NCBI GenBank assembly: GCA_964057225.1
Contig: OZ059900.1
Location: 9,176,001-9,240,000, forward strand
Source of the DNA: Auanema rhodensis
Lineage: Eukaryota; Animalia; Nematoda
Length of the DNA stretch: 64,000 nucleotides
Reading direction: 5' to 3'
Position numbers and translations under genes: made by a program. The notes under the pieces were generated by a model. It did no database searches. It worked only from the letters and a program-made list of their open reading frames with translations, and had not been told where the DNA came from. Of the stretch, positions 45,950 through 64,000 are shown piece after piece. Each line of letters begins with the position of its first letter. Position 1 is the stretch's first letter.

Positions 45950-45969
45950 TTTTGTATTTTAGTGATTGT

Positions 45970-46017: not shown

Positions 46018-46815
46018 TTAATTCTTGAAAATAAACAACATTGAGTGGTCTGTTGTAAGAGTGCAGTTTTTGTAAGACTAATTTAAAATAACTTAGTAAC
46101 TTGCGTCACAAACAGCATAGTATTTCATTTCTGATTGCTATTTGTTTATTTTCTTATCATCTATTTAGATAATTGCATTGTTTATACAGTTGAAAATTAT
46201 TAACTATTGCCTTGTGTTTTATTAATTTGAATTATTAATTTCAATTTCTGGGTATATATTATTGAATTTTTCTTCATTTTCTCTTTCATTTTCTCAAATA
46301 CAGACTGTCTTCATCAAATATTCAATATGACCGTTTAGAACATCAATATGTTACCTCACAATGAGAAATAAGTTAATTTGCTTTGTCGTCTTCAACTAGA
46401 AATAATGTGGCTTTCAGACATCAGCGCTTTTCTCTTTTAGAATTTCATGAGGATGAACAAGAGAGAATATTCAGGTTTGTTCACTGTATTGAATTTTACT
46501 GGAATATTATATCATTGTTGTATAATTTCCCTCAATGTTCTTCGAGCACAAAATTCAAAATATATTTATAGTATATATACATTGATTTTAAATTTGTAGA
46601 AATTTATAAAATCCATATTCTGAAATATGAAAAGACAGGAATTGTTTTTGATTCATTTCCCCTTCATATTTTCCACAAAAAAAAAGATTTTTTAAAATTA
46701 TTTATTTATGTGTTCAAATGAATTAAATAGTTAGAGATTATTCAATATTACAATAACAAAATTAAAATTATTGACTTATTTATAGCTTATAGTGCAAGTT
46801 TATGTTTATAGATAA

Positions 46816-47795
46816 CTAGAATGCATTCACAATCTTCTTTTTTATGTCCTTCAGGAGCCTCTTGTGCCAGGTTGGATTGAAAATTTGCTTATAGTTTAAC
46901 AAGAGATTCCGTGTTATCTAAATGTTATAATTTAAATTAAAACTTCACTGTTTTGTTGTGGCTTACTCTGCATATTCTATTTGACTGATTGGAATCTCTC
47001 AGATTAACAAAGATCCCTTTGCCGATTCTCAGTAAAAAGATAGTTTTCTCTTCATGTAGAAGTTCAGAGTTTTCTATGTGATTATGATAAACTGGCTGGT
47101 CCAGTTCAGCATATTTCATGTAATTGGCAAAGAACTTGATAACAAACTTAAAGTTGTTATAGTGAGGATTTTTTATTTTTCTCACTTCTTTTGTTAGCTG
47201 ATCTATCAGAGCACCATGAGTCAAGTTCAACCTATAACATGTCGGTAGTCGTTTGATACGTAATTTCATAATATGCCAATCTTCATCATTTACATCAACA
47301 AAAATGTTATTGTTGGTTATGCCTTCAGGAAGGCTGTATAAGTAATGTAAGAGAGCTTCTGCAACAATCCATGGATTATTGTCATAATCTTTGTCTAGAA
47401 TCTAACAATATACGTTTCAATTTAAAGTTTTTCGATGAATTACCGTATCATCTTGCTCTTCCAAGTACTTGCAAAGATCATTCCAATTAGGATTTCCAAC
47501 TTCACAAGTGAACAATCCTGGAAACCTATGAACATTAAGCTTAGAAATTTACAAATTTATACCAGGTTCCAATATTTCTTTCTTGCTAAGCTTTTTGCAG
47601 CAACAAGAAATAGGCAAGGCAATGGTCCGTTTACAAGCAGACAAATGTTTTTTGAGAGATACGCCGTAGACGGGTTTTTCAGGCAAGATTCTCTCATATC
47701 CTAGGTTGATATGTTTAAATAAGATCAAAATGACATCTACCACCAGCTACATTTCTCCATTTTTGTCGGATATAACAATATAGAGAGTTTGCCAT
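46816..47795 (-). CDS. RhoGAP-domain-only protein (RICH/SH3BP1-like), arginine finger absent, left-arm copy
   Basis: Mirror of 51343-52322. Confidence 0.7.
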
Positions 47796-48316
47796 ATTCT
47801 CGACTAGGAGAATGGACAAAAATAATAAGGACAAGATAAAAAAACAAGGCGGTGCTTCAATCTTAATCTTCAACAAGATATTTCAAAATGAAAATGATAT
47901 ATGTAGTTGTTTTAGTTTTATATAAGTTATTAATGAGGGAATGAAGTGATATTTCATATGAAAAAACTTTATAGGTTATATTATAAAATAAATTTGAATT
48001 TGATATGAAAATATGAAAAATGAATTCATTTTCTTTATTGCAGTATAAAATCGAAAAAAAAAACTAAAATACAGAATATTCTTCTGGCTGAAAAATGAAC
48101 TCTTCAATTTGTTTCGAGTTAATAGAAGGTTCAGTAGTTTTGAAATAAATTCTCTGATTATAAAATACTTGAATCTCAAACATGGTAAGCTTTTAGTGAT
48201 AAGATAAAGCTAAAGTGCTTGAAAAATACTTGTGAAACCCAGAAAGAATATTAATAGTTTATCATATATGTAGTATGATCTTATTATATATTTTATATTT
48301 TATAGTTAATTCATAT

Positions 48317-48389
48317 AACATCTTAGTATAATGGTTGTATTTCAGTTATAGTAAGGTGCACTTGTAGGTTCAAATCCTACAGTGATATC
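48317..48389 (+). pseudogene. Degenerate tRNA-like element (mirror at ~50749-50821)
   Basis: A-box-like TAGTATAATGG and a perfect T-arm GTAGG-TTCAAAT-CCTAC. The acceptor and anticodon stems are poor. Confidence 0.45.
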
Positions 48390-48630
48390 AAAGAAAATAT
48401 AAAATATCTCTCTCTCTCTAAAATATAAATCTCTCTCTCTAATATAGAAATCTCTCTATAATCAGACACTTGACAAAGTTACTACAGAAAGGTGTTGAAG
48501 CTGCACTAATCACGATCACAGACAAATTGCAAAAATCATCTTACCCTCGACTCCATTGTTTCGAAAAAGTTTTGGATTTCAAATACTCTTGTCACTCTTC
48601 TTATTTGCGATTTAAACATTAATATTATAA

Positions 48631-48705
48631 GCCAAATGGTCGAGTGGTCTTTATGGTAAACGCTTACAAGCCACTGTAAAGGTACGATCCCTTTCTGCGT
48701 TTTTT
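48631..48705 (+). pseudogene. Degenerate tRNA-like element (mirror at ~50433-50507)
   Basis: A-box-like TGGTCGAGTGG, T-arm AAAGG-TACGATC-CCTTT, then a T6 run. The cloverleaf is incomplete. Confidence 0.45.
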
Positions 48706-51342
48706 ATGAAAATTAATACCAAATCGAAAATCCAAAAAACGCTCCGATGGATTTGGACCTCAAAAAAGCCATTTTTTTGACATTCCAAAGCTTATAACTC
48801 TCTTCAAAATCTATTTTCTTACAAATTTATTTTTATAATCTTGTAGCCTTGCAATAGACCCTCCTTTTCACAAAAATTCAAATCTATATCTCACCTTACT
48901 CAGTAGTTATTCTTCTTCAAAACGAACACAAATATTCAAAAACTTGACTTTAAAGGCCATTATCTCCTTTCTCCTTCAAGTTATCGAAAATTTCTAAACG
49001 AATTCTAAACTTACTCAACAAGATCTATCAAATAAATTACTTATATGGAAGTTTGAAGCACTTTGAAATTTTGAAAAATCAAGAATTTAGCCATTTTTCA
49101 GTTTGAGAAATAAAAAATTTGCATTTTCTTTGTTTTGAGTGATGCATCAGAAGCGCATTGAAACGCTGATTTCAAATTTAAAAACCTTAACTTCCAATTT
49201 TCACTTTGAAAAGAGTTACTAGGCTTTAAACGTTTTGACTTTAAATATTCAGAAGGCTATATCTCCTTTCAGACAGCGTTTCAGAAACTCGTAAGTATCA
49301 GAATCGTTTTCTACGCCATTGTTTCACCTTATGTAATCATTTTCAAAGCGTTTCCTCAATATTTTCAAATTTCGATCAAATTGTCTGATTCCATGTACTC
49401 CCCCCTTACCTACTTTTCGACCGAAATTGGCCATCACTCAAAAAATATTTTCAGTTTAAATCGATAATTATATGATATAATTAGATTGAAACTGAAGTTT
49501 AAGAGATAGAATAACATGAACATCTTCATTTTTAAACTCTTTCGTCAGTTGCATCATGATAACTTAGATTCTACTTCATGAGGAATCAGGATTAACAACT
49601 GACAACTCTTCAGAAAAAGCTTGAGAATGTGTTTGATATACATCAGTTTCAATCTAATTATATCATATAATTATCGATTTAATCTGAAAATATTTTTTGA
49701 GTGATGGCCAGTTTTGGTCAAAAAGTAGGTAAGGGGGGAGTACATGGAATCAGACAATTTGATCGAAATTTGAAAATATTGAGGAAACGCTTTGAAAATG
49801 ATTACATAAGGTGAAACAATGGCGTAGAAAACGATTCTGATACTTACGAGTTTCTGAAACGCTGTCTGAAAGGAGATATAGCCTTCTGAATATTTAAAGT
49901 CAAAACGTTTAAAGCCTAGTAACTCTTTTCAAAGTGAAAATTGGAAGTTAAGGTTTTTAAATTTGAAATCAGCGTTTCAATGCGCTTCTGATGCATCACT
50001 CAAAACAAAGAAAATGCAAATTTTTTATTTCTCAAACTGAAAAATGGCTAAATTCTTGATTTTTCAAAATTTCAAAGTGCTTCAAACTTCCATATAAGTA
50101 ATTTATTTGATAGATCTTGTTGAGTAAGTTTAGAATTCGTTTAGAAATTTTCGATAACTTGAAGGAGAAAGGAGATAATGGCCTTTAAAGTCAAGTTTTT
50201 GAATATTTGTGTTCGTTTTGAAGAAGAATAACTACTGAGTAAGGTGAGATATAGATTTGAATTTTTGTGAAAAGGAGGGTCTATTGCAAGGCTACAAGAT
50301 TATAAAAATAAATTTGTAAGAAAATAGATTTTGAAGAGAGTTATAAGCTTTGGAATGTCAAAAAAATGGCTTTTTTGAGGTCCAAATCCATCGGAGCGTT
50401 TTTTGGATTTTCGATTTGGTATTAATTTTCATAAAAAACGCAGAAAGGGATCGTACCTTTACAGTGGCTTGTAAGCGTTTACCATAAAGACCACTCGACC
50501 ATTTGGCTTATAATATTAATGTTTAAATCGCAAATAAGAAGAGTGACAAGAGTATTTGAAATCCAAAACTTTTTCGAAACAATGGAGTCGAGGGTAAGAT
50601 GATTTTTGCAATTTGTCTGTGATCGTGATTAGTGCAGCTTCAACACCTTTCTGTAGTAACTTTGTCAAGTGTCTGATTATAGAGAGATTTCTATATTAGA
50701 GAGAGAGATTTATATTTTAGAGAGAGAGAGATATTTTATATTTTCTTTGATATCACTGTAGGATTTGAACCTACAAGTGCACCTTACTATAACTGAAATA
50801 CAACCATTATACTAAGATGTTATATGAATTAACTATAAAATATAAAATATATAATAAGATCATACTACATATATGATAAACTATTAATATTCTTTCTGGG
50901 TTTCACAAGTATTTTTCAAGCACTTTAGCTTTATCTTATCACTAAAAGCTTACCATGTTTGAGATTCAAGTATTTTATAATCAGAGAATTTATTTCAAAA
51001 CTACTGAACCTTCTATTAACTCGAAACAAATTGAAGAGTTCATTTTTCAGCCAGAAGAATATTCTGTATTTTAGTTTTTTTTTTCGATTTTATACTGCAA
51101 TAAAGAAAATGAATTCATTTTTCATATTTTCATATCAAATTCAAATTTATTTTATAATATAACCTATAAAGTTTTTTCATATGAAATATCACTTCATTCC
51201 CTCATTAATAACTTATATAAAACTAAAACAACTACATATATCATTTTCATTTTGAAATATCTTGTTGAAGATTAAGATTGAAGCACCGCCTTGTTTTTTT
51301 ATCTTGTCCTTATTATTTTTGTCCATTCTCCTAGTCGAGAAT

Positions 51343-52322
51343 ATGGCAAACTCTCTATATTGTTATATCCGACAAAAATGGAGAAATGTAGCTGGTGGTA
51401 GATGTCATTTTGATCTTATTTAAACATATCAACCTAGGATATGAGAGAATCTTGCCTGAAAAACCCGTCTACGGCGTATCTCTCAAAAAACATTTGTCTG
51501 CTTGTAAACGGACCATTGCCTTGCCTATTTCTTGTTGCTGCAAAAAGCTTAGCAAGAAAGAAATATTGGAACCTGGTATAAATTTGTAAATTTCTAAGCT
51601 TAATGTTCATAGGTTTCCAGGATTGTTCACTTGTGAAGTTGGAAATCCTAATTGGAATGATCTTTGCAAGTACTTGGAAGAGCAAGATGATACGGTAATT
51701 CATCGAAAAACTTTAAATTGAAACGTATATTGTTAGATTCTAGACAAAGATTATGACAATAATCCATGGATTGTTGCAGAAGCTCTCTTACATTACTTAT
51801 ACAGCCTTCCTGAAGGCATAACCAACAATAACATTTTTGTTGATGTAAATGATGAAGATTGGCATATTATGAAATTACGTATCAAACGACTACCGACATG
51901 TTATAGGTTGAACTTGACTCATGGTGCTCTGATAGATCAGCTAACAAAAGAAGTGAGAAAAATAAAAAATCCTCACTATAACAACTTTAAGTTTGTTATC
52001 AAGTTCTTTGCCAATTACATGAAATATGCTGAACTGGACCAGCCAGTTTATCATAATCACATAGAAAACTCTGAACTTCTACATGAAGAGAAAACTATCT
52101 TTTTACTGAGAATCGGCAAAGGGATCTTTGTTAATCTGAGAGATTCCAATCAGTCAAATAGAATATGCAGAGTAAGCCACAACAAAACAGTGAAGTTTTA
52201 ATTTAAATTATAACATTTAGATAACACGGAATCTCTTGTTAAACTATAAGCAAATTTTCAATCCAACCTGGCACAAGAGGCTCCTGAAGGACATAAAAAA
52301 GAAGATTGTGAATGCATTCTAG
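51343..52322 (+). CDS. RhoGAP-domain-only protein (RICH/SH3BP1-like), arginine finger absent, right-arm copy
   Basis: Spliced product reads EKPVYGVSLKKHLSACKRTIALPISCC..EPGLFTCEVG..NPWIVAEALLHYLYSLPEG. This parallels the RICH-family EKPxFGxxLxxHL..REIALPIEAC..EEGLFR..DPHAVAGALKSYLRELPEP. Confidence 0.7.
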
Positions 52323-53188
52323 TTATCTATAAACATAAACTTGCACTATAAGCTATAAATAAGTCAATAATTTTAATTTTGTTATTGTAATATTGAATAA
52401 TCTCTAACTATTTAATTCATTTGAACACATAAATAAATAATTTTAAAAAATCTTTTTTTTTGTGGAAAATATGAAGGGGAAATGAATCAAAAACAATTCC
52501 TGTCTTTTCATATTTCAGAATATGGATTTTATAAATTTCTACAAATTTAAAATCAATGTATATATACTATAAATATATTTTGAATTTTGTGCTCGAAGAA
52601 CATTGAGGGAAATTATACAACAATGATATAATATTCCAGTAAAATTCAATACAGTGAACAAACCTGAATATTCTCTCTTGTTCATCCTCATGAAATTCTA
52701 AAAGAGAAAAGCGCTGATGTCTGAAAGCCACATTATTTCTAGTTGAAGACGACAAAGCAAATTAACTTATTTCTCATTGTGAGGTAACATATTGATGTTC
52801 TAAACGGTCATATTGAATATTTGATGAAGACAGTCTGTATTTGAGAAAATGAAAGAGAAAATGAAGAAAAATTCAATAATATATACCCAGAAATTGAAAT
52901 TAATAATTCAAATTAATAAAACACAAGGCAATAGTTAATAATTTTCAACTGTATAAACAATGCAATTATCTAAATAGATGATAAGAAAATAAACAAATAG
53001 CAATCAGAAATGAAATACTATGCTGTTTGTGACGCAAGTTACTAAGTTATTTTAAATTAGTCTTACAAAAACTGCACTCTTACAACAGACCACTCAATGT
53101 TGTTTATTTTCAAGAATTAATGATCTTGTTTTGTAGATCACAAGATCAGTGTTTTGTAGATCACAAGAACAATCACTAAAATACAAAA

Positions 53189-53307
53189 AGCTTACGGCAC
53201 CCGGGATTCCCAAGCCGTCTCCGATCCAAGTACTAACCGGGCCCAACGTTGCTTGACTTGCCAGATCGGACGGGATGGCGTACTTTCAACGTGGTATGGT
53301 CGTAAGC
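53189..53307 (-). rRNA. 5S rRNA gene (right arm)
   Basis: Reverse complement of 45831-45949. Confidence 0.95.
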
Positions 53308-53317
53308 GACAAATCTT

Positions 53318-53617
53318 TGTCGCGGTTAGCGATTATTTTTTATCCTTTTTTCTATGTTTTGTTCCATTTCAGTTTTGTTTTTATCGTTTTCCTTTACTTT
53401 GTCTATTTCAGATTGTACTTTTCGGCCCGCCTTCCCATATCTTCATCTTTGGGATCGGAAAATACGATATACCTCAACTTACTTCAACGGAGTATAGACG
53501 ATCTATATTTTGTTGATATTGTTAACTTTCTCTTTAATAAAGCATTCTACCACTGACTATCCGTTCTATTAATTCTCAGCGGAATACCGACAACCGAATA
53601 CCTTCGCCGAAGCGACA
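53318..53617 (+). repeat. 5' LTR (300 bp)
   Basis: TG...CA ends with a 6 bp terminal inverted repeat and an AATAAA inside. About 3 substitutions versus the 3' LTR. Confidence 0.97.
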
Positions 53618-53618
53618 T

Positions 53619-53631
53619 TGGTGCATCGACC
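53619..53631 (+). promoter_or_regulatory. Primer binding site, complementary to the tRNA-Gly 3' end
   Basis: TGGTGCATCGACC, 1 nt after the LTR, matches the reverse complement of ...GGUCGAUGCACCA of tRNA-Gly(GCC), recalled from memory. Confidence 0.8.
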
Positions 53632-53900
53632 ATCACGACTCAGGTCACTGCTTCAACAGGTACTTTATCATTTAATTTGGTGGCGACTCTTAAGTCCATC
53701 AGCTCAGGCGTGAATTTGCCTGCAGTAATCGATATAATTTCGGAGCATAATAACGCTCCAAGATACGACAAGTCGTATATCTCATACTCATTTGTTGTAC
53801 TTTGTACAACTTTCATTTCTTGTTCTCTCTCATTTTCTGAATTTTATTCATCATTATCAGCTATAGAAGCTTACCTATTACGCCTCACACAGCGTTAGAA

Positions 53901-56900
53901 ATGGCCTCCTCATTTGTTGGCGACATTCGTCGTTCATACGACTTCTTATCCGTTTTGCTGAAACGTTACGCAAATCTTCTCGACAACGAACCCGCCGGGG
54001 TATCTGATTCAGAAATAACATACGATAGAATTATTTTACTGCAATCAACTTTACGCAATCATGAATTGGTATTGAACGAGCTCTCTACTGCTCTCGACAC
54101 AGTGAACAGAAACATAGAAAAATACCAAACCGTTTTCAAAGATTCTGATAAGGATCTTCGAAACGAAATGAAAGCATTATACGAAGAACTTGAAGAAAAT
54201 CCAAACAATCGTCAAGCTTACAATATAGCTGACGAACAAAGATTATTACTCCTTGACCGTATCAGTCATATTAAAACAGCAATTGCATTCGTGGAATCAC
54301 TACTTCCCGAGAAAAAGAAAGAAAAAGTAATCGAAAGCACTGGTACCGAAACAACACAAATTTATTCAAATTTATTACAATTGTTACAAACAAGCAATCA
54401 TATTCAACGTCCGGTAACACAAATACCGACTTTCGATGGTACACCCGAAAATTTCAAACTGTATTGGTCAAGATTTAATAACATGATACATCAAAATTCA
54501 CAATATTCCATACTTGATAAAGTGAACATTTTACTCGAAGGCTTATCCGATAAAGCTTTGGTCGTTATAAGGGGTATTGAACCTAATGAAAACAACTATC
54601 TCTTACTGAGAAAAGCACTTGAAAATGCATATATGAGATATGCTACAGATAAACTTCAATTATTGAGGAAAATGAAAAATTTATCTCCTGCTTCTGATGC
54701 AAAAAGCTGTAAGCAATTATTTGATTTGATCCAAAGCTATGATCGTCAAATTACAGCCGCTGGAAGTCATATTGGTCCTGAATTTTTCTTTGCTATTTGC
54801 GCTGAAAAATTTCCTCATTATATAATGAGTGAACTATATCGTCAACCAGATCCTCTAGATCAATCAATGGATGACATTTATCAACATCTCTCTTCACGAA
54901 TTTATGAATTCAGTTTAATGGACACTAGAAAACGAAATTCAGAACATGACTCACATAATTCACCAAATCGTGGAAAACATGTTGATAAAACTTTCGACAA
55001 ATCCACTAAAAAAATTTGGACTTGTGTTTTTTGTGGTAAAGAAGGACATCCATCTTATTATTGCCGTACTTATGACACACCACAGAAAAAACGTGAAATC
55101 TTAAAGAACAAAGAAGTATGCTGGCTTTGTTTCTCTACTTCACATCGCAGTCGTGATTGTTCTCGACCGAAATGCCCGAAATGCAAAAATGAGCATAACA
55201 GTTGCTTATGTCTAAATTTAGATCGTGAAACAAAGAGTCCTGTAAAACCTATATCGTCCACAAGCATGATCATAACAGAAAGTGCAGGACAACAAACTCC
55301 AGACCTTACAGTCTCACAAAATAAAAATGACATCATTTCTACACCAACTGTATCACAAACAGTACCTACAGTACAACCAGCATTTTTCAATCATCTACCA
55401 GTAACATTAATAGTTACTGAACCTAAGAATACACAATTACAATTGCTTACACATACCGAGGATACCCATGATATCGAGATGAGTCAAATTGTATTGAAAA
55501 CAGCTATGACACATATATTCAGTTACACACAAAATAAATATATCACAGTAAAGGTAGTGATTGACAGTGGCTCTATGCGGTCTTTCATACGTAGTGATAT
55601 AGCTAAGGATCTTCAATTGCCTATTAACAAAGTTCAACATCGCACATTCTTTGGAATAGGTGGCCTCAGCGAAACACATGAATGTAAAGAAGTGAAAACT
55701 ATTTTTTATACTTCTAATGGCAGTATCATCATAACCAACATGCTTACGAAACCATTCATAGCTACATCATTAAGAGCTCCACTTTTAGACAATAATGATC
55801 GTTCATTCATTAAAAGAAACAATATAACTTTAGCTAATCCAATGATTGATGGTCAGGCATTTGAACCAGATATTCTAATTGGATTAGATCGCTATAAGTT
55901 ATTCGTTCATATGAATTCTGAACTTGAGTTACCCTCTACATTAAGAATGCAGAATACCAGTTTCGGTTATACCTTGTATGGGGAAATACCATATCAAAAT
56001 CATTCTGTTACGTTAATAACAATTAATGATAAACCATTACAACATAATGATATGCTTCGATACATATTTGAAATTGATAGCTTAGGAATTAATACTTCTG
56101 AAGCTGGAATTGACACAACTATTGATTATTACGAAGATTATTCAAAACAGTTGACACTAACCAATCATCGTATTGAAGCTCCTTTACCATTGAAATCAAA
56201 TTATCATCAATTACCAGATAATAAAGGTTTAGCCTTTTATCGATTTTTGGCATTGTTCAAAACTTTACAAGCAAATCCTTCGAAATTGGAAATGTACAGG
56301 AAAATTATTGATGATTATATCGATAACGGTATCATTGAAGAAGTTCCTTTTGAAACTTCCAACAATAATCATAATTCTGATATTATATGTCATTATATTC
56401 CACATCATGGGGTATGGAATACAAACAAGCCGAATAAACCTTTACGAGTTGTTTTCGATGCTTCAGCTAAAACTAAGGGTAAATTATCCCTTAACGACAT
56501 ACTATATACTGGAAAAAGTTTTGTGAACAATATTTTCAACATTCTCATTGCTTCAAGAATAAAACCAATCATTATTACTTGTGATATTCAATCAGCCTTT
56601 TTACAAGTAGGCTTACAGAAGCAACATCGGGATCTTTGCCGTTTCTTTTGGGTAAAGGATCCTCAAGGAAGTTGTAACTCAAGTAATACTAAGGTTTTTC
56701 GATTCAAACGCATACCATTTGGATTGACTGCCTCACCTAGCATTCTAAACATGAGTGTAAATTGGTATTTAAGCTCTTTGAATACTGACTTATCAGATGA
56801 AATATTAAATACATTATATGTAGATAATATTCTATTATTTGCTGATAGTATAGATGAAGCTCAACAGAAATGTTCACTTACACAACAATTATTTCAAAAT

Positions 56901-59900
56901 ATTTCGATGCATGTTCGTGAATTCGCATCGAATAAGTCAGAAGCTCTTCAGCACCTTCATAAAGATGATATTCTCTCTGATTGTCCACTAAAAATTCTTG
57001 GAGTACCTTATAATGCTCTAAGTGATTCCCTTTCAATTCGATTCAATATACCGGAACTCTCAACAGTAACCAAACGAAACGCATTACAACAATTACATTC
57101 AGTTTATGATCCTTTGGGTATAACAAATCCATTAATTTTACCCTTGAAGGTTATTCTTAGAGATATTTTTGCACTTAAAACAGAATGGGATGATACTATA
57201 CCTTCTGAATTATCAGCCTCTTGGACATCAATAATTAACGAGATTAATTATGCTAAGGTTACTGTACCTCGTGTACTATCACCATCTATTGAAGAAGGTA
57301 CATTATGGGTCTTTGCTGACGCTAGTTCAACAGCGTTAGCTGTGTGTGCTTACATACAGACAAACAACAAAATGAGTTCTATTCTAGCAGGTAAAAGCCG
57401 CTTATCTCCTAAAACACCAATCACAATTCCACGCATGGAACTCTTAGCTATTCGATTAGCTATGAGACTTTCTCACACAATATTAATGGAATTACCATGT
57501 AAAAAACTAAATATTGTAAGTGATAGCAGCATTGCGTTATCATGGATTTTAACAAATAAGCAATTACCTGACTTCATAGCAAAACAAGTTCAAAATGTAC
57601 AACATATGACCCGTTTATTAGAAGAACATTCGATTAATGTTCAATTTTACCATGTTACTACGGATTATAATCCGGCTGACATTGGTTCACGAGGAGCCAA
57701 TAAATATCAACTTCAGGAATCTATGTGGCTTCTTGGACCACAGTGGATTCTTAACAGAACCGTTCAAGCTTTAACACCATATGGTTCCTTGCAAGTGATG
57801 CATGTTTCACCTGTATCATTACTTATAGCTCAAGCTATATCTGTACCTTTGGAACATAACCTAGCTTATCATAACGGTCATTTTGCAACTTTACGTTTGT
57901 TAGCCCGTTTGGCTAAAATTATAAAAATTTGGCATTTAAAAACATTTAAAAATCAAAATGGACATAAATTACGAAATATTTCACAAATATCAACATCATA
58001 TCCCGTTTTAACAACTGATTTGAAGATAATACGTACTATTTTAATTCGACAAGCTCAAGATCATCTCATTATTGATGATTTACGACGACAATATCCTGGT
58101 TATCATTTCTATCTTGATGATAACGAGATAATTCGAGTAAGAAGCCGATTACAAAATTCTTTACTATCCTATGATACAAAAAACCCAATTTATCTTCCTC
58201 GCAACTCATTATTCACTCAACACATAATTATGGACGCTCATCGCGCATCTTTTCATCAAGGAAAAGAATTTTTGATCACACATCTTCGTCAAACTTATTT
58301 TATTGCTCGCGCTGCAGCAATTATAAAACAAACTTTAAAGAAATGTCATTTATGCAATAAATATCAATCTTTACCATATGGCACTCCTGATATGCCTTCA
58401 TTGCCTAAAGATAGAGTGATATTAACTAAACCATTTCTTAACACTGGTTGCGACTTATTTGGACCTATTATGCTTAAAAGTGGACATAAGGTCTATGTAT
58501 GTCTTTTTACTTGCTTAACCATACGTGCCATTCATCTTGAAATGGTCTATGATCAAACAGCGACTTCATTTATGAACGCTTTCACTCGTTTCATAGCCCG
58601 ACGAGGTTTACCAACCACAATACGAAGTGATTGTGGGGGTAATTTTATTCTCGGAGCTCAATTAATTGAGACAATACAAAAATCAGCTGAATTTAATTTC
58701 ACCCCAGCTGATATTGTAGTCCATCTAGCCAAAAATAACATAAATTGGCTCTTTAACACACCTAAGTCTCCATGGAAAGGAGGTTCTTGGGAAAGAATGG
58801 TGGGAATTACTAAAAATGCAATGAAAAAGGCAATACAAAGAAATAAATTAACATTTGATGAATTATTAACTTTAATTGTCAAAATTGAAGCAGTCATTAA
58901 CACAAGGCCTTTAACACATCCAGATCCAAATAATATAAATCACGTACCTATTCGTCCTGTCGATTTCATTTCGCCTGGTCTTGTTCTTTCCCTACCGGAT
59001 GATTGTGGTTCTCGAGTTTATAATAATTCCATTGATATTCCTGTAATACAAAACGTTGAACAAGCATTAGAAACTTTACAACTTACTTCTGATGCAGCTA
59101 CGATGTTTTGGGATAAATTTCAAACAGAATATTTGATATATATTCGTGATATATACAAACATTCCCGAAAACAACCTTCAGCAAATGCCAATAAACCTAA
59201 TATTGGTGAAATTGTAGTTATACATAACGATAACTTACCTCGTGGTCAATGGAAACTTGGTCGAATCACAGAACTTATAAATAGTTCTGATGGATTCATT
59301 CGTACAGCTAAAGTTCTCACACCAGCTGGGAACATCATATCTCGTTCCTTAAATCATCTATATCCACTTGAATTACGAAGTGTTCTACCTGATATGACAT
59401 CAATTCCTCAATCTACTCCTTCCGAAGACACTTCATTGTCTTTGAAGGTAGGATCTGCTTCGGATATGATGAACCTTGATGCTCAACCAATACAGGAATA
59501 TATTATAAGATCAAACTCACCTGTACCTTCAATCCATGAAACGAACAATGTGGTTACATGTCCTGAACCAATAGATATTAATAATCCTCAAAAAATTTAC
59601 ATACCTACGTCCAAAATTTCTTCGATACATAATCCGATCCTTGAGGAAGAAGCTGAATTACAATTATGGGGTCCAGGTCATACGCCTGACGATAATCGTA
59701 AAAAATTACAAAAGAAAAACATAAGTAAAGCAAAACAAACCATAATTTTGCCTACCATTGACCAAAACGACGTAAAACCATCTACTGAAACAAACGCAAA
59801 CCGTGTTCGCACCTTACCTTTACGGGATCACATCACCTACGCTTCGCGAAAGAATTTCAAATCAGCAATGACGTCTGCACTTTTAATTTTTACAATAATA

Positions 59901-61814
59901 TCGATATTTTTACCCGTAGCATCTGCAAATTCTGTAGTATGTGATGAGGCAAAGTTTTTATCCATACATTTGCTTGGAAACCCACATTGTGCTCCTCATC
60001 TTGCCATGTGGTCATTGTTCTTACCACTTTGTTGTTTATTTGGCATCCTTTGTTGTTGTATACGCATAGGATTCCATCAATATCGATATAATTCCTGGTC
60101 TAATACTATTCGTTACATATCTTCTTTTTTCACACTTAGACCTCATACTCCGGAACAGAATGATATTGAATTAGGAGTTATTGAACCTCCTCCAACTTCA
60201 TCTGAGAATATTCCACATATAGAACCTAAATTATATCCTCCATTTTGGAAAAGAGGTTCTCGATTATCAATTATCAGTATACTAACGATATTTCTGATTA
60301 ATAATGCTACTGCTTGTACCGATCATCACGTTATTCATTCGGTTTCTACACATTGTCTGAATCGTACTCAATGTTATCACCAATATAGTGATCAAATAGT
60401 TTTTTCTCCTGGAGTTAAAGATTTATGCCTGGATATAAAATTTAAAAATCATTCTATTGGTTATATTCAAATTCGAAAATTATATACAAGTTATGAATGT
60501 AAGAAAACCACAAAATTTTTTACAAAGGCTACTTTGCCCAAACTAACTGTTGATTTTCGATGTGCTCATATGGGATCTTGTGATCAAACTTGTGAAACTA
60601 TGAATCATCGCTCTCGTATTTCTGAATTCGAACCATATAATTATCCAACACAATCCAAATGTGTCCGGTCTTCAGCACATATATGGCGTTGTTTGACATT
60701 TTGGGAAAACCCTTGTCTTTTCTACAAATTAGAACATGTACCTACTTCGGACGACATATTTGAAGTATTTAAATGTGAAGATTGGACAACATCTTCAACT
60801 TTTGAAATTACAACACATATTGTTAAAGATAAAAATATTTATAATATCACAATTCCACCATATTTGAAGATGAATTACTCTTTTTTCAATATGACGATCA
60901 ATACACAAGACAAACCTCCTACTCCACTTCATAATTATTATTTTGTTGCTTCAAACAATCAAATCTTTGCTGTTGAACCACATTTTCCATTTATGGTACA
61001 ATGTATTTCGAAGGCAGACACTTCCGACAATTTTTCAAGATGTACAACGGTTATCGATTGTACTTGTAACAAAATCAATAATGATGTTGCTGGCTGTATA
61101 TGTCCACAACATAATTTCACACATTTTTCTCATATTTTACCTCCGTATATGGCAAACACGGAGACAATCTATAAACCCGATACATCCTTAACTTTTCGAA
61201 CTCAGTCTGATGAAACTACAGTTTCAATTGATTCTGAACTTTTATATGACAGTAATACATTTTCCTATGATATACCTTGTCGTCCCTTATTGATCAGTCT
61301 CTCCGGATGTTATTCCTGTGGGCAGGGTGCATCTGCATTGTTTTCTTGTATGTCATCTAAAGAAACATGGATACCGATCGAGTGTTCAAATGATGTATTC
61401 ATGATTAAATGTTCACCCTTCAATGAAATTACAAATATCAATATTAAAAGAGATAATTCAATTATAAATGAAGTTTGTCATACTAAATGTAATCATGAAA
61501 AAATTGATATAATTGTAACGGGACAATTATATTTTAATTCATCTACTAATGAACCAAATGAAATTCATTCAAATCAGAATTCAGTTATAATACCTGACAT
61601 AATTCCTTTTTTGAAACTTTTTAAAGAACACTGGATGATGTTTTCAATCTGCGTTGTTTTTCTGATCATCATATGTTTTTTGGGATACCTAGGTTGTACT
61701 CCAGCCATTTATTTTTTCTTGATCACAGCTTTCCGTACTATTAAAATCATAATAGATACAACAACCAAGTTTTTCTTTATTCTTAGAAATCTTTGTTTTG
61801 ATAGAAGATTTTAA
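53901..61814 (+). CDS. Gag-Pro-RT-RNaseH-IN-Env polyprotein (2637 aa)
   Basis: Three Cys/His knuckles (CVFCGKEGHPSYYC, CWLCFSTSHRSRDC, CPKCKNEHNSCLC), protease DSGS, RT LRVVFDAS/YVDN and RNase H FADAS. The integrase has H..H..C..C plus DLFGP/SDCG/WERMVG. A Cys-rich phlebovirus-G2-like glycoprotein (RCAHMGSC, GCYSCGQGA) carries a C-terminal TM. Confidence 0.97.
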   Translation: MASSFVGDIRRSYDFLSVLLKRYANLLDNEPAGVSDSEITYDRIILLQSTLRNHELVLNELSTALDTVNRNIEKYQTVFKDSDKDLRNEMKALYEELEENPNNRQAYNIADEQRLLLLDRISHIKTAIAFVESLLPEKKKEKVIESTGTETTQIYSNLLQLLQTSNHIQRPVTQIPTFDGTPENFKLYWSRFNNMIHQNSQYSILDKVNILLEGLSDKALVVIRGIEPNENNYLLLRKALENAYMRYATDKLQLLRKMKNLSPASDAKSCKQLFDLIQSYDRQITAAGSHIGPEFFFAICAEKFPHYIMSELYRQPDPLDQSMDDIYQHLSSRIYEFSLMDTRKRNSEHDSHNSPNRGKHVDKTFDKSTKKIWTCVFCGKEGHPSYYCRTYDTPQKKREILKNKEVCWLCFSTSHRSRDCSRPKCPKCKNEHNSCLCLNLDRETKSPVKPISSTSMIITESAGQQTPDLTVSQNKNDIISTPTVSQTVPTVQPAFFNHLPVTLIVTEPKNTQLQLLTHTEDTHDIEMSQIVLKTAMTHIFSYTQNKYITVKVVIDSGSMRSFIRSDIAKDLQLPINKVQHRTFFGIGGLSETHECKEVKTIFYTSNGSIIITNMLTKPFIATSLRAPLLDNNDRSFIKRNNITLANPMIDGQAFEPDILIGLDRYKLFVHMNSELELPSTLRMQNTSFGYTLYGEIPYQNHSVTLITINDKPLQHNDMLRYIFEIDSLGINTSEAGIDTTIDYYEDYSKQLTLTNHRIEAPLPLKSNYHQLPDNKGLAFYRFLALFKTLQANPSKLEMYRKIIDDYIDNGIIEEVPFETSNNNHNSDIICHYIPHHGVWNTNKPNKPLRVVFDASAKTKGKLSLNDILYTGKSFVNNIFNILIASRIKPIIITCDIQSAFLQVGLQKQHRDLCRFFWVKDPQGSCNSSNTKVFRFKRIPFGLTASPSILNMSVNWYLSSLNTDLSDEILNTLYVDNILLFADSIDEAQQKCSLTQQLFQNISMHVREFASNKSEALQHLHKDDILSDCPLKILGVPYNALSDSLSIRFNIPELSTVTKRNALQQLHSVYDPLGITNPLILPLKVILRDIFALKTEWDDTIPSELSASWTSIINEINYAKVTVPRVLSPSIEEGTLWVFADASSTALAVCAYIQTNNKMSSILAGKSRLSPKTPITIPRMELLAIRLAMRLSHTILMELPCKKLNIVSDSSIALSWILTNKQLPDFIAKQVQNVQHMTRLLEEHSINVQFYHVTTDYNPADIGSRGANKYQLQESMWLLGPQWILNRTVQALTPYGSLQVMHVSPVSLLIAQAISVPLEHNLAYHNGHFATLRLLARLAKIIKIWHLKTFKNQNGHKLRNISQISTSYPVLTTDLKIIRTILIRQAQDHLIIDDLRRQYPGYHFYLDDNEIIRVRSRLQNSLLSYDTKNPIYLPRNSLFTQHIIMDAHRASFHQGKEFLITHLRQTYFIARAAAIIKQTLKKCHLCNKYQSLPYGTPDMPSLPKDRVILTKPFLNTGCDLFGPIMLKSGHKVYVCLFTCLTIRAIHLEMVYDQTATSFMNAFTRFIARRGLPTTIRSDCGGNFILGAQLIETIQKSAEFNFTPADIVVHLAKNNINWLFNTPKSPWKGGSWERMVGITKNAMKKAIQRNKLTFDELLTLIVKIEAVINTRPLTHPDPNNINHVPIRPVDFISPGLVLSLPDDCGSRVYNNSIDIPVIQNVEQALETLQLTSDAATMFWDKFQTEYLIYIRDIYKHSRKQPSANANKPNIGEIVVIHNDNLPRGQWKLGRITELINSSDGFIRTAKVLTPAGNIISRSLNHLYPLELRSVLPDMTSIPQSTPSEDTSLSLKVGSASDMMNLDAQPIQEYIIRSNSPVPSIHETNNVVTCPEPIDINNPQKIYIPTSKISSIHNPILEEEAELQLWGPGHTPDDNRKKLQKKNISKAKQTIILPTIDQNDVKPSTETNANRVRTLPLRDHITYASRKNFKSAMTSALLIFTIISIFLPVASANSVVCDEAKFLSIHLLGNPHCAPHLAMWSLFLPLCCLFGILCCCIRIGFHQYRYNSWSNTIRYISSFFTLRPHTPEQNDIELGVIEPPPTSSENIPHIEPKLYPPFWKRGSRLSIISILTIFLINNATACTDHHVIHSVSTHCLNRTQCYHQYSDQIVFSPGVKDLCLDIKFKNHSIGYIQIRKLYTSYECKKTTKFFTKATLPKLTVDFRCAHMGSCDQTCETMNHRSRISEFEPYNYPTQSKCVRSSAHIWRCLTFWENPCLFYKLEHVPTSDDIFEVFKCEDWTTSSTFEITTHIVKDKNIYNITIPPYLKMNYSFFNMTINTQDKPPTPLHNYYFVASNNQIFAVEPHFPFMVQCISKADTSDNFSRCTTVIDCTCNKINNDVAGCICPQHNFTHFSHILPPYMANTETIYKPDTSLTFRTQSDETTVSIDSELLYDSNTFSYDIPCRPLLISLSGCYSCGQGASALFSCMSSKETWIPIECSNDVFMIKCSPFNEITNINIKRDNSIINEVCHTKCNHEKIDIIVTGQLYFNSSTNEPNEIHSNQNSVIIPDIIPFLKLFKEHWMMFSICVVFLIIICFLGYLGCTPAIYFFLITAFRTIKIIIDTTTKFFFILRNLCFDRRF

Positions 61815-61922
61815 CATTGAACTAATTCAGTACTATCCTTAAAAATCTTACTATATAAGCATCATGGGTCATTATGCGACGGACAACGTCGCAAAAGGCC
61901 AATGGCTTAGCTGCGGCGGCAG

Positions 61923-62222
61923 TGTCGCGGTTAGCGATTATTTTTTATCCTTTTTTCTATGTTTTGTTCCATTTCAGTTTTGTTTTTATCGTTTTCCTTT
62001 ACTTTGTCTATTTCAGATTGTACTTTTCGGCCCGCCTTCCCATATCTTCATCTTTGGGATCGGAAAATACGATATACCTCAACTTACTTCAACGGAGTAT
62101 AGACGATCTATATTGTGTTGATATTGTTAACTGTCTCTTTAATAAAGCATTCTACCACTGACTATCTGTTCTATTAATTCTCAGCGGAATACCGACAACC
62201 GAATACCTTCGCCGAAGCGACA
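61923..62222 (+). repeat. 3' LTR (300 bp)
   Basis: Direct repeat of 53318-53617, followed by the TSD ATCTT. Confidence 0.97.
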
Positions 62223-62351
62223 ATCTTCTTGTATTGCCGACTATATTATAAATGCCTTGTTCAATGTTCGAAAATCGCGTATTTCATGCATAATTCGATG
62301 AATATGAAATGTTGGTCAACGATTCAACATTCTTTTTGAATTTTTGATAGA

Positions 62352-62645
62352 TGTCGCGGTTAGCGATTATTTCTTATGTTTTTCATATGTTTTGTCTCCT
62401 TTAAGTTTTTGTTTTTTATCGTTTTCCTTTACTTTGTCTATTTCAGATTGTACTTTTCGGCCCGCCTTCCTACATCTTCATCTTTAGGATCGCAAACACA
62501 ATATACTCAACCGAACCTAAACGGACTATACGATCTATATTTTGTTGAATTGTTAAACTGTTAATAAAACATTCATCCACTGACTATCTATTCTATTGAT
62601 CCTCAGCAGAAATCCATAACACGAAATACCTTCGCCGAAGTGACG
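62352..62645 (+). mobile_element. Solo LTR (294 bp), older relative of the full element (right arm)
   Basis: Starts TGTCGCGGTTAGCGATTATT and ends TTCGCCGAAGTGACG (CA>CG). It is flanked by the direct repeat ATAGA (62347-62351 / 62646-62650) and is visibly diverged from the 300 bp LTRs. Confidence 0.92.
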
Positions 62646-62957
62646 ATAGAATACAATTTATTCTAACTATTTTTAATCTTAGAAAGCAAGTGTTAATATG
62701 AATAAACTATTTATAAAACTTATAGAATTCAAAAAACAAACAACATCCAGGATATAAGCCTGTCAGTTGTACAATCTGTTAAACTTTCCGAACAAATCAA
62801 CAAAACAAAACAAAATCACACTACTTACAACAACAAAGCAACAAACAGAAAGTAGTGCCCCAAGAATTAATAATCATATTGCTACATATCATCACTTTTT
62901 GTACAATTTCACATTCAGTCAAAACGTATTTCTACTGCTGCAATTCCTGCTTCTAAA

Positions 62958-64000
62958 TCAGGGATTGGCACAAAAACCTGAAAAAAACAAAAAACTTTGA
63001 ACATTCACTGAAATTAAAATTTACACAGGATTGATTTCCACTCTTACGCGGTTCTGTTACCCTAGGTCGTGGTGAGATTACGACATTTTCTTTTCTCAAC
63101 TAAATATTCATGTTTTCGATATAATAAATAGAAACCACTTACCACTTTTCTTATGTATTTCAGTTGATCTGGAGTGTAGTGTATATTCCTTGTACGTATA
63201 TATGGCTTTAGCATGTTTGTAATATTCGGAGGATGAGTAAAAACGTTTGCATTCAACTGAAACAAACAAATAAAGAGAATTCTACTATAAGATTGTGTTA
63301 CATAATCCCTAATTTTATAGAACGAAGATGCACTGAGATCCTTAACCAAATGGATTCGCATAACCTTTTCGTTTATTTCAGCCTTAATTGAAAGTTGAAA
63401 AATACATATAGGAAAAAAAACACTGACATCCTTGAAATACATAGGAGGAACATTTGTAATCGATTTAGTAGAAAATACAATCTATAATCAAAGCATAGCT
63501 AATTAATTGAGCGAATATTTCTATTTCTCACAACATGCTCAATAATATTCAATACTTCGTTATTGGTGACGTTACTCTCAGGATCCTCGAGATATTTCTA
63601 GGAACACAAACTTTTTTTGTTCATTCATTAACATCACTAACCTTTTCACTACATCTGCTCAATAACATGTCGTGTTCTTGGTTGCAAGTGAAGATATTTA
63701 CATTCTGATCGTTGATAACTACATCTATCATTTTACCAACTCTATCCAGATCAGCAGTTTTCACATCCAAGCATTCATATATAGCATCCATTGAATTCAA
63801 AATTTCTTCACATATATTGTCAAGCTTATACATTGCATCATGTTCACCGATTAAGACGGGTGGCTCCACACGCTCCGTATGTTTGCAAACCATGGTATGA
63901 GTGAATTCTTTGAGGTAGAATGCAAAATCCTGCTTCAACCAAAAGTTGCGATATATCAATTTTTCAAATGTTTCTTCCATTTCCTCATATCTACATTTAA
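62958..64000 (-). CDS. Orphan multi-exon protein, right-arm copy (5' end outside window)
   Basis: Mirror of 43966-45090. Confidence 0.6.

What the first reader, a model, noticed from the sequence alone, without database searches (positions are those of the whole stretch)
53189..62650. Two independent BEL/Pao insertions just upstream of one 5S rRNA gene: candidate Pol III/5S-targeting endogenous nematode virus
Seen: the full element's TSD (ATCTT) occupies -10..-6 relative to the 5S start, and the empty site is readable in the left arm (45821-45830, AAGATTTGTC|GCTTACG). A diverged solo LTR of the same family, with a different TSD (ATAGA), lies ~135 bp upstream of the same 5S start. Both point away from the 5S gene. 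Known: yeast Ty3/Ty1 and Dictyostelium elements target Pol III gene upstream regions through TFIIIB/TFIIIC/Pol III contacts. I know of no such behaviour for BEL/Pao elements. Inference: two hits of different age within 140 bp suggest integrase tethering to the Pol III complex as a safe-harbour strategy. Two events are suggestive, not proof.
Basis: partly seen in the sequence, partly recalled or inferred. Interest (0 to 1): 0.9.

Follow-up and report, generated by a model that had tools for sequence, protein, structure and literature searches.

The report
Intact endogenous virus beside 5S gene
An intact retrovirus-like element and an older relic of the same family both sit just upstream of one 5S ribosomal RNA gene, which hints but does not prove that this animal element family aims at genes read by RNA polymerase III, as some yeast and amoeba elements do.

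Summary
A complete 8,905-bp LTR element (53318-62222, + strand) lies with its 5-bp target duplication at -10..-6 of a full-length 5S rRNA gene (53189-53307, - strand). An identical 5S copy in the other arm of a near-perfect inverted duplication shows the empty site. A solo LTR about 83% identical to the full LTRs, with its own 5-bp duplication, ends 134 bp upstream of the same 5S start. It is present in both arms, so it is one older event. Both insertions point away from the 5S gene.

The element has one unbroken 2,637-codon Gag-Pol-Env frame. It carries the BEL/Pao hallmark domains and a phlebovirus Gc-like envelope, so it is a new member of the Atlas-like nematode belpaoviruses.

No other copy or fragment of the family occurs in the 64 kb. 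Under uniform insertion, two hits in that 140-bp stretch have a chance of about 1e-5 or less.

A preference for the upstream side of this Pol III gene is the best reading (about 0.55). It rests on two events, and the tethering mechanism is inferred by analogy. The deciding genome-wide survey of other copies was left out, because fetching an animal virus is barred here. No paper found reports Pol III targeting by a BEL/Pao or any animal LTR element.

The parts
53189..53307 (-). 5S rRNA gene, right-arm copy, with the full element just upstream of it
   Evidence: Rfam RF00001, 107.5 bits, model positions 1-120. A T run follows the 3' end.
53313..53317 (.). Target-site duplication of the full element, 5S-proximal copy (ATCTT on +; -10..-6 of the 5S start)
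   Evidence: Direct reading. The same 5 nt occur once in the empty site.
53318..53617 (+). 5' LTR (300 bp, TG..CA ends). Its first bases place an A/T-rich block at -37..-25 of the 5S start.
   Evidence: the repeat finder D1, blastn.
53619..53636 (+). Primer-binding-site-like stretch beginning TGG, 2 nt after the 5' LTR
   Evidence: Direct reading. The matching tRNA was not identified, as the window holds no tRNA gene.
53901..61814 (+). Single Gag-Pol-Env reading frame, 2,637 codons, with no stop or frameshift
   Evidence: the ORF listing. The translation has no internal stop.
54432..54776 (+). Gag-like domain (Pfam DUF1759)
   Evidence: E 5.5e-9.
55497..55658 (+). Retropepsin-like stretch (weak match)
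   Evidence: Peptidase_A2B E 0.0022, below Pfam's own cut-off.
56553..57527 (+). Reverse transcriptase (RVT_1) followed by the Pao-specific Peptidase_A17 domain
   Evidence: E 2.8e-12 and 1.5e-36.
58215..59366 (+). Integrase: H2C2 zinc domain, catalytic core, and the C-terminal DUF5641 domain
   Evidence: Integrase_H2C2 E 2.4e-5, rva_4 E 0.0085 (weak), DUF5641 E 1.5e-14. The translation was read.
59367..59915 (+). Orphan linker of 183 residues between the integrase and the envelope signal-like segment; Ser/Thr/Pro/Asn-rich with one basic cluster
   Evidence: No Pfam family. No relative among 1.84 billion representative proteins. Not alignable to the two nearest relatives.
60315..61547 (+). Envelope: phlebovirus G2 (Gc) fusion domain and its C-terminal domain
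   Evidence: Phlebovirus_G2 E 8e-43, Phlebo_G2_C E 0.0088. PDB 7a4a (Atlas virus Gc) E 1.5e-19, followed by phenuivirus Gc chains.
61913..61922 (+). Weak polypurine-like stretch next to the 3' LTR
   Evidence: Direct reading. Only 7 of 10 bases are purines, so the assignment is unsure.
61923..62222 (+). 3' LTR, differing from the 5' LTR at 3 of 300 positions
62223..62227 (.). Target-site duplication of the full element, distal copy (ATCTT on +)
62347..62650 (+). Solo LTR (62352-62645) with its 5-bp duplications (ATAGA on +), right-arm copy
   Evidence: blastn: 83-84% identity to the full LTRs over 299-300 nt. Flanks read.
45398..45701 (-). The same solo LTR (45403-45696) with its duplications, left-arm copy; it ends 134 bp before the 5S start
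   Evidence: It lies inside the mismatch-free arm.
45821..45830 (+). Empty target site: a single AAGAT followed by TTGTC, directly before the left-arm 5S gene
45831..45949 (+). 5S rRNA gene, left-arm copy, with its native upstream region (TATA-like block at -34..-24)
44048..49501 (.). Left arm of the inverted duplication; its outer end is set by the window end
   Evidence: the repeat finder I1 and I2. No mismatch over 44048-49417, and 6 mismatches in the innermost 85 nt.
49502..49636 (.). Unique 135-nt spacer at the centre of the inverted duplication
49637..64000 (.). Right arm of the inverted duplication, interrupted by the full element and cut by the window end
   Evidence: The two host pieces were compared apart.

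Best explanation
Shown: an intact, fairly young Atlas-like belpaovirus (a BEL/Pao LTR element with a phlebovirus Gc-like envelope gene in one Gag-Pol-Env frame) was integrated by its own integrase. The evidence is complete LTR ends and a 5-bp duplication. The insertion lies 6-10 bp upstream of the start of one of two identical 5S rRNA genes, in one arm of a natural inverted duplication. An older relative had already integrated 134 bp upstream of the same gene, before the duplication, and has since collapsed to a solo LTR.

Inferred: this family prefers the upstream side of Pol III-transcribed genes, here 5S. The likeliest means is that the integration complex is held by a protein of the Pol III initiation machinery seated on the promoter, as in Ty3 (TFIIIB) or Ty1 (Pol III subunits). 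The full element landed at the start-site edge of the place where TFIIIB would sit if the TATA-like block at -34..-24 is its anchor.

Such a site is a safe harbour. The 5S promoter is largely internal, the gene has an identical twin 7 kb away, and the LTR end itself puts an A/T-rich block at -37..-25 of the interrupted copy.
For: Anatomy and independence of the two events:
- They have different duplications, about 17% LTR divergence, and the solo LTR is in both arms.
- Both have the same orientation relative to the 5S gene.
- The only two family sequences in about 50 kb of non-redundant host DNA both lie within 140 bp upstream of the only Pol III gene found.

Chance:
- P is about 8e-6 for both insertions, and about 1e-6 with one of them inside 10 bp.
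- Illustrative genome-scale estimates, using assumed copy numbers, also give far fewer than one double hit.

Fit to known targeting:
- -10..-6 matches the window of the known start-site-targeting LTR elements: Ty3 1-4 bp, Ty3p about 6, Tyl3 about 5, Tj1 1-10 bp. Tj1, Ty1 and TRE5-A are also known at 5S genes (PMC5911963).
- Native TATA-like block and its LTR-borne stand-in.

Recent activity:
- The frame is intact and the LTRs are 99% identical.
Against: - There are only two events, at one locus, found by a reader who was looking for oddities.
- The older insertion, at -134..-130, lies outside a Ty3-like narrow window. It would fit only a broad Ty1-like window or a changed preference.
- No chromodomain, PHD or other known targeting module was found. 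The stretch after the integrase C-terminal domain is an orphan, is not conserved in the nearest relatives, and has no detectable relative anywhere.
- No published case for BEL/Pao or any animal LTR element was found.
- Other copies of the family were not examined.
Confidence: 0.55

Rival explanations
1. A local hotspot unrelated to the Pol III machinery. The second element landed here because of the older LTR (its chromatin state or small-RNA marking), or because this short AT-rich, probably nucleosome-poor stretch is easy to enter. The 5S gene is a bystander.
For: The full element lies only 124 bp from the solo LTR of its own family. The region is 65-80% A+T upstream of the gene. Pao-group elements in Drosophila favour AT-rich, weakly palindromic sites (PMC3276498). 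The two insertions sit at quite different distances from the 5S start.
Against: This does not explain why the first, older element came to lie within 140 bp of the 5S start. It does not explain why the second sits at -10..-6 rather than anywhere in the roughly 260 bp around the old LTR (about 2-4% by position). No other repeats or mobile-element remnants pile up in the arms. No unusual DNA structure is predicted at the site.
Confidence: 0.2
2. Coincidence helped by retention. Insertions fall more or less at random, and only those in harmless places, such as the flank of a redundant RNA gene, survive in a compact genome. This window was flagged because it happens to look striking.
For: The sample is two events, picked out after the fact. 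The interrupted 5S gene has an identical intact twin, so the insertion is probably neutral.
Against: Uniform chance is about 1e-5 to 1e-6 for the window. It stays far below one expected case per genome for assumed copy numbers up to thousands. Retention bias can raise this by perhaps an order of magnitude, not by five. The window holds tens of kb of other intergenic DNA with no copy.
Confidence: 0.12
3. Direct DNA recognition rather than protein tethering. The integration complex is drawn to a short sequence at the very start of the 5S gene that mimics the element's own LTR end, which would make the preference specific to 5S.
For: The 8 nt at -4..+4 of the 5S gene are identical to the outermost 8 nt of the LTR and lie 1 nt from the duplication. 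In the whole window this 8-mer occurs only at the 5S starts, at the LTR ends and at one other place. About 1.2 occurrences are expected by chance, and none of 100 shuffles reached 5.
Against: It is a single case. The older insertion site shows no such motif. The LTR and the 5S locus share no significant similarity beyond the 8-mer. I know of no precedent among LTR elements (from my own knowledge, not tested).
Confidence: 0.07
4. Assembly artefact. The inverted duplication is a fold-back misjoin of two haplotypes, one with and one without the element, so 'empty' and 'filled' are alleles rather than paralogues.
For: The arms show no mismatch over 5,370 nt, while the element's own LTRs differ at 3 of 300 positions (Fisher p 1.5e-4). 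That is odd if the insertion is younger than the duplication.
Against: There is a unique 135-nt spacer, and arm identity decays over the last 85 nt. A second, independent near-perfect palindrome lies 2 kb away, with 7 mismatches in 2,274 nt, sharp ends, a 544-nt spacer and real troponin-like genes. Arm-to-arm gene conversion explains the identity. Even if the duplication were an artefact, both insertions, their duplications and the empty site would stand.
Confidence: 0.04

Closest known systems
Atlas virus of the hookworm Ancylostoma ceylanicum and the 'Atlas viruses' of nematodes (Belpaoviridae-like endogenous viruses)
   Same: An LTR element of about 9 kb with one Gag-Pol-Env polyprotein free of stops, near-identical LTRs, BEL/Pao Pol domains and a phlebovirus Gc-like class II envelope domain (PMC9094657; 2026 preprint abstract).
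   Different: It is only distantly related. The Gc match to 7a4a is E 1.5e-19. The best integrase-region relative in 5.8 billion clusters is 42% identical. No Gn-like part is recognisable, as only about 130 residues lie between the signal-like segment and Gc. The Atlas papers say nothing on integration sites, tRNA or 5S genes.
Ty3 (S. cerevisiae) and its kin Ty3p, Tj1 and Tyl3: start-site-targeting Ty3/gypsy elements
   Same: LTR elements that integrate with a 5-bp-scale duplication within 1-10 bp upstream of a Pol III start site. Tj1 also inserts at the 5S gene (PMC5911963). The full element here sits at -10..-6.
   Different: They belong to a different superfamily (Ty3/gypsy rather than BEL/Pao) and to fungal hosts. 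Ty3 targeting through TFIIIB has been shown experimentally, whereas nothing has been tested here. The older insertion at -134 does not fit a narrow window.
Ty1/Ty2/Ty4 (S. cerevisiae), Ty1/copia elements targeting a broad window upstream of Pol III genes
   Same: A window of hundreds of bp upstream of tRNA and 5S genes would take in both -8 and -132. In Ty1 the targeting signal lies in the integrase C-terminal region (PMC5911963; PMC7459421 abstract).
   Different: They belong to a different superfamily. Ty1 integrase binds Pol III subunits. The region following the integrase here has no detectable relatives and no shown function.
DGLT-A and TRE5-A of Dictyostelium
   Same: They insert upstream of Pol III genes in a compact genome. 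TRE5-A inserts in the opposite transcriptional orientation and also at 5S genes. Both insertions here are likewise divergent from the 5S gene.
   Different: DGLT-A is Ty3/gypsy and inserts 13-33 bp upstream in either orientation. TRE5-A is a non-LTR element that integrates by another mechanism.

Membership tests
BEL/Pao LTR retroelements (Belpaoviridae) | Two LTRs with TG..CA ends flanking an internal region | tested here: met
   300-bp LTRs identical at 297 of 300 positions, with TG..CA ends.
BEL/Pao LTR retroelements (Belpaoviridae) | 5-bp target-site duplication | tested here: met
   AAGAT for the full element and TCTAT for the solo LTR. Drosophila Pao-group elements make 5-bp duplications (PMC3276498).
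BEL/Pao LTR retroelements (Belpaoviridae) | Pao-type Gag and Pol domains in the order protease, RT, RNase H region, integrase | tested here: met
   DUF1759, a weak retropepsin match, RVT_1, Peptidase_A17, Integrase_H2C2 and DUF5641, in that order. The nearest relatives are BEL/Pao polyproteins.
BEL/Pao LTR retroelements (Belpaoviridae) | tRNA primer-binding site after the 5' LTR and polypurine tract before the 3' LTR | tested here: inconclusive
   A TGG-initiated stretch lies 2 nt after the LTR, but only a weak purine-rich run precedes the 3' LTR. The matching tRNA was not identified.
Atlas-like nematode endogenous viruses | Single uninterrupted Gag-Pol-Env polyprotein | tested here: met
   One ORF of 2,637 codons with 0 stops and 0 frameshifts.
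Atlas-like nematode endogenous viruses | Phlebovirus Gc-like class II fusion protein | tested here: met
   Pfam Phlebovirus_G2 E 8e-43. PDB 7a4a (Atlas Gc) E 1.5e-19.
Atlas-like nematode endogenous viruses | Gn-like glycoprotein ahead of Gc | tested here: inconclusive
   No family matched. Only about 130 residues with two hydrophobic segments lie between the signal-like segment and Gc.
Atlas-like nematode endogenous viruses | Nematode host | tested here: inconclusive
   The host is an animal (troponin exons, U4, 5S). The element's nearest named relatives are from Globodera, Heterodera, Panagrolaimus, Bursaphelenchus, Meloidogyne and Caenorhabditis. No host protein gave a named match.
Pol III-gene-targeting retroelements (Ty3-like or Ty1-like behaviour) | Family-wide excess of copies next to Pol III genes over random expectation | not testable with these tools
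   Only the window could be used: 2 of 2 family sequences lie within 140 bp upstream of the single Pol III locus. Fetching other copies of an animal virus was barred, so that step was left out.
Pol III-gene-targeting retroelements (Ty3-like or Ty1-like behaviour) | Characteristic distance from the Pol III start site | tested here: inconclusive
   The full element at -10..-6 fits the Ty3/Tj1 range. The solo LTR at -134..-130 fits only a broad Ty1-like window.
Pol III-gene-targeting retroelements (Ty3-like or Ty1-like behaviour) | Recognisable targeting module in or next to the integrase | tested here: not met
   No domain was found beyond H2C2, the core and DUF5641. The 183-residue stretch that follows has no Pfam match, no relative in 1.84 billion proteins, and is not conserved in the nearest relatives. 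Known targeting signals can be short and unconserved, so this weakens the claim without excluding it.
Pol III-gene-targeting retroelements (Ty3-like or Ty1-like behaviour) | Dependence on an assembled Pol III promoter complex (TFIIIB, TFIIIC or Pol III contact) | not testable with these tools
   No test was possible. What can be said is that the 5S gene is full-length, with a TATA-like block at -34..-24 and a T-run terminator.

The most novel reading that the evidence does not exclude
A lineage of env-bearing BEL/Pao endogenous viruses of nematodes has evolved integration aimed at the upstream edge of Pol III-transcribed genes. That would be the first case in the BEL/Pao superfamily and the first for an LTR element of an animal, and so a further independent origin of the safe-harbour strategy known from yeasts and social amoebae. 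It might come with a twist: the LTR end mimics both the 5S start (an 8-nt identity) and the displaced TATA-like block.
Probability: 0.5. Interest if true: 0.8.

Novelty: new variant of a known kind. Interest (0 to 1): 0.62.

Why it matters
Targeting of Pol III genes is the textbook example of a mobile element choosing a harmless landing place. In the reviews read here it is documented only for Ty1/copia, Ty3/gypsy and L1-type elements of fungi and Dictyostelium. A BEL/Pao element of an animal doing the same would show that the strategy arose again in a third LTR superfamily and in compact metazoan genomes. It would also give a natural system for asking how an integrase reads a Pol III promoter.

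The claim is cheap to settle by description alone: a census of the family's copies against the Pol III gene map of the source genome. Apart from targeting, the locus is a clean record of an apparently intact, distant relative of the Atlas viruses, with both filled and empty sites side by side.

Tried and rejected
- **Other copies in the window:** blastn with both LTRs, the solo LTR and the internal region, and tblastn with the polyprotein, found nothing beyond the two described insertions.
- **Other Pol III genes near the locus:** ARAGORN and Rfam at E<=1 found only 5S, the Pol II-type U4 gene and two sub-threshold snoRNA-like hits.
- **A 5S or tRNA relic next to the solo LTR that could explain its position:** none found.
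- **A 5S-derived piece in the LTR:** local alignment is no better than shuffles, so this was rejected. Only the terminal 8-mer is shared.
- **Unusual DNA structure at the target:** none.
- **A targeting domain:** lenient Pfam scans, comparison with the two nearest relatives and a full-library search of the post-integrase linker were all blank.
- **Solved-structure relatives of Gag-Pol:** none by sequence.
- **Host identity:**
  - An exact look-up of the polyprotein and three host ORFs found nothing in the collection.
  - A homology search with a protein-like 158-residue ORF of the arm (43951-44427) found no relative.
  - Pfam on 30 host ORFs gave only EGF/teneurin-like and troponin exons.
  - Host exons were not joined into gene models.
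- **Literature:** nine searches found no report of BEL/Pao or animal LTR elements targeting Pol III genes. The library is not complete, so absence there is not proof.
- **Fold-back assembly artefact:** considered unlikely.
any fetch of other copies of this or related endogenous viruses by pattern, look-up or accession.
Full report
**What is in the sequence**

Rfam finds two full-length 5S rRNA genes, at 45831-45949 (+) and 53189-53307 (-). Each scores 107.5 bits against a gathering score of 38. It also finds a U4 snRNA gene at 43345-43494. ARAGORN finds no tRNA gene.

The two 5S genes are mirror copies inside a large inverted duplication.
- The left arm runs 44048-49501.
- The right arm is 49637-53317 and resumes at 62223-64000, where the window ends.
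- Comparing the two host pieces apart, the arms have no mismatch over 5,370 nt.
- They have six mismatches in the innermost 85 nt and a unique 135-nt spacer.

**The full element**

The right arm alone is interrupted by 8,905 bp (53318-62222), bounded by 300-bp direct repeats that differ at 3 positions and have TG..CA ends.
- Read in 5S sense, the filled site is CAAG-AAGAT-[element]-AAGAT-TTGTC followed by the first base of 5S.
- The left arm reads CAAG-AAGAT-TTGTC-5S.

The element carries one reading frame of 2,637 codons (53901-61814, + strand) with no stop and no frameshift. A TGG-initiated primer-binding-like stretch lies 2 nt after the left LTR. The element is therefore transcribed away from the 5S gene.

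Pfam places these domains along the polyprotein, in order:
- DUF1759 (Gag)
- a weak retropepsin match
- RVT_1
- Peptidase_A17 (the Pao signature)
- Integrase_H2C2
- a weak integrase core match
- DUF5641
- Phlebovirus_G2 (E 8e-43) with its C-terminal domain

The best solved relative of the envelope part is chain 7a4a, the Gc of the hookworm Atlas virus (E 1.5e-19). Phenuivirus Gc proteins come next. Nothing in the PDB matches Gag-Pol by sequence.

This is the architecture described for Atlas virus: about 9 kb, near-identical LTRs and one Gag-Pol-Env polyprotein (PMC9094657). A 2026 preprint describes the same for the wider 'Atlas viruses' of nematodes (abstract).

It is a distant member.
- The exact protein is not in the 15-billion-protein collection.
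- The best integrase-region relative is 42% identical.
- The next relatives are BEL/Pao polyproteins of Globodera, Heterodera, Panagrolaimus, Bursaphelenchus, Meloidogyne and Caenorhabditis.

**The solo LTR**

A 294-bp sequence is 83-84% identical to the LTRs over their whole length. It lies at 45403-45696 in the left arm and at 62352-62645 in the right arm. It is flanked on both sides by TCTAT in 5S sense and ends 134 bp before the 5S start. It has the same orientation relative to the 5S gene as the full element.

Because it sits in both mismatch-free arms, it is one event that predates the duplication. It is independent of the full element: the duplication differs, the position differs, and the LTRs diverge by about 17%.

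**Order of events**

The inferred order is:
1. The old insertion occurred.
2. It collapsed to a solo LTR.
3. The inverted duplication formed.
4. The full element inserted into one arm.

One oddity remains. The LTR pair differs at 3 of 300 sites, while the arms differ at 0 of 5,370 (Fisher p 1.5e-4).

Arm-to-arm gene conversion after the insertion would explain it. The pattern is plausible here because a second near-perfect palindrome lies 2 kb to the left (37722-39995 / 40540-42813). That one has 7 mismatches in 2,274 nt, sharp ends, a 544-nt spacer and troponin exons. For the same reason I rate a fold-back assembly artefact as unlikely. Even if it were one, it would leave the two insertions and the empty site untouched.

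**Is it more than chance?**

blastn and tblastn find no other copy, LTR fragment or coding remnant of the family in the window. No other Pol III gene is present.

In about 49.6 kb of non-redundant host DNA, the probabilities under uniform insertion are:
- two random insertions both falling in the 140 bp upstream of the 5S start: about 8e-6
- the same with one of them inside 10 bp: about 1e-6
- a second insertion landing within 130 bp of a first, anywhere: about 5e-3

Illustrative genome-scale estimates, with assumed and not measured copy numbers, give between 1e-6 and 4e-3 expected double hits per genome. Uniform chance is therefore a poor explanation, even allowing for the fact that the locus was picked because it looks striking. 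Chance cannot be told apart from a non-uniform preference unrelated to Pol III.

**Mechanism**

The review of Pol III-targeting retroelements lists these insertion windows (PMC5911963):
- Ty3: 1-4 bp upstream of the start site
- Ty3p: about 6 bp
- Tyl3: about 5 bp
- Tj1: 1-10 bp, and also at 5S
- DGLT-A: 13-33 bp
- Ty1, Ty2 and Ty4: a window of about 1 kb
- TRE5-A: upstream, in the opposite orientation, and also at 5S

The full element's position at -10..-6 falls in the Ty3-like class. The empty allele has a TATA-like block at -34..-24. If that block anchors TFIIIB, which is my inference from general knowledge of upstream elements at some 5S genes, then the insertion lies at the start-site edge of the TFIIIB seat.

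The older insertion, at -134..-130, does not fit a narrow window. It would fit a broad Ty1-like window or a different preference in an older subfamily.

I found nothing in the protein that looks like a known targeting module.
- After the integrase C-terminal domain comes a 183-residue Ser/Thr/Pro/Asn-rich stretch with one basic cluster.
- It has no Pfam match.
- It does not align with the two nearest relatives.
- It has no detectable relative among 1.84 billion representative proteins.

Known targeting signals can be short and poorly conserved, so this lowers the tethering idea without excluding it.

My best reading, at about 0.55, is a family preference for the upstream side of Pol III genes, with tethering to the promoter complex as the most likely means. 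The insertions, their independence and their positions are shown. The preference and the mechanism are inferred.

**Rivals**

- **Local hotspot or homing to the earlier LTR (0.2).** The new copy is 124 bp from the old one, in AT-rich DNA. This explains neither the first hit nor the -10..-6 position.
- **Coincidence plus survival of harmless insertions (0.12).**
- **Direct DNA recognition (0.07).** The 8 nt at -4..+4 of the 5S gene equal the outermost 8 nt of the LTR and lie 1 nt from the duplication. In the window the 8-mer occurs only at the 5S starts, the LTR ends and one other site, against 1.2 expected. It is a single case, is absent at the older site, and the LTR shows no wider similarity to 5S.
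- **Assembly artefact (0.04).**

**Comparison with what is known**

As an element it is a new, distant member of a known kind, the Atlas-like belpaoviruses. As a behaviour, Pol III-upstream integration is well known, but in the reviews and searches available to me it is limited to Ty1/copia, Ty3/gypsy and L1-type elements of fungi and Dictyostelium. I found no report for BEL/Pao or for any animal LTR element.

If the preference is real, it is a new variant of a known kind. The membership table lists which defining features were tested.

The decisive computation is a census of the family's other copies against Pol III genes. I left it out and referred it.

The element has no breaks to count. 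Host exons were searched singly and not joined. No contig looked human.

One slip: while reasoning I wrote out from memory a 5S rRNA sequence of a model nematode.

**Verdict**

I score interest at 0.62, because a simple descriptive census would settle a claim that would extend a classic targeting strategy to a third LTR superfamily and to animals.

Noticed in passing
window 44048-64000 (centre 49502-49636): A large inverted duplication whose arms show no mismatch over 5,370 nt, while the LTRs of the element inserted in one arm differ at 3 of 300 sites (Fisher p 1.5e-4). This suggests ongoing arm-to-arm gene conversion that stops at the insertion. The outer limit is unknown because the window ends.
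   Followed up: partly
window 37722-39995 and 40540-42813; third copy about 7500-8790: A second near-perfect palindrome: 7 mismatches in 2,274 nt, a 544-nt spacer and sharp ends. It carries troponin-I-like exons (Pfam Troponin E 2.4e-7). A paralogue 77-94% identical lies 30 kb away.
   Followed up: partly
window 45827-45834, 53304-53311, 53610-53617, 62215-62222: The outermost 8 nt of the LTR (TGTCGCTT in 5S sense) are identical to -4..+4 of the 5S gene, 1 nt from the target duplication. There are 5 occurrences in the window against 1.2 expected. No wider LTR-5S similarity exists.
   Followed up: partly
window 53318-53345 versus 45797-45807: The insertion displaces the native TATA-like block (-34..-24), but the LTR end puts an A/T-rich block at -37..-25 of the interrupted 5S copy. 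That copy might therefore keep an upstream element.
   Followed up: no
window 59367-60314: Between the integrase and Gc lie a 183-residue orphan linker with no relative in 1.84 billion proteins, and then only about 130 residues with two hydrophobic segments. No Gn-like glycoprotein is recognisable, unlike what is described for Atlas virus.
   Followed up: partly
window 43345-43494: A U4 snRNA gene (60.4 bits) lies 2.3 kb upstream of the left 5S gene, between the two palindromes. No element of the family lies next to it.
   Followed up: no
window 43951-44427: A protein-like 158-codon ORF inside the palindrome arm, just outside the solo LTR. It has no Pfam family and no relative in the 5.8-billion-cluster search.
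   Followed up: partly
window 5382-6525 (- strand): EGF/teneurin-like exons of a host gene (weak Pfam matches). Exons were not joined.
   Followed up: no
window 46994-47060 (-) and 49096-49177 (+): Two sub-threshold snoRNA-like Rfam hits inside the arm: snoU85 at 23 bits and Caenorhabditis ceN86 at 28 bits. Both are below their gathering scores and are probably chance.
   Followed up: no
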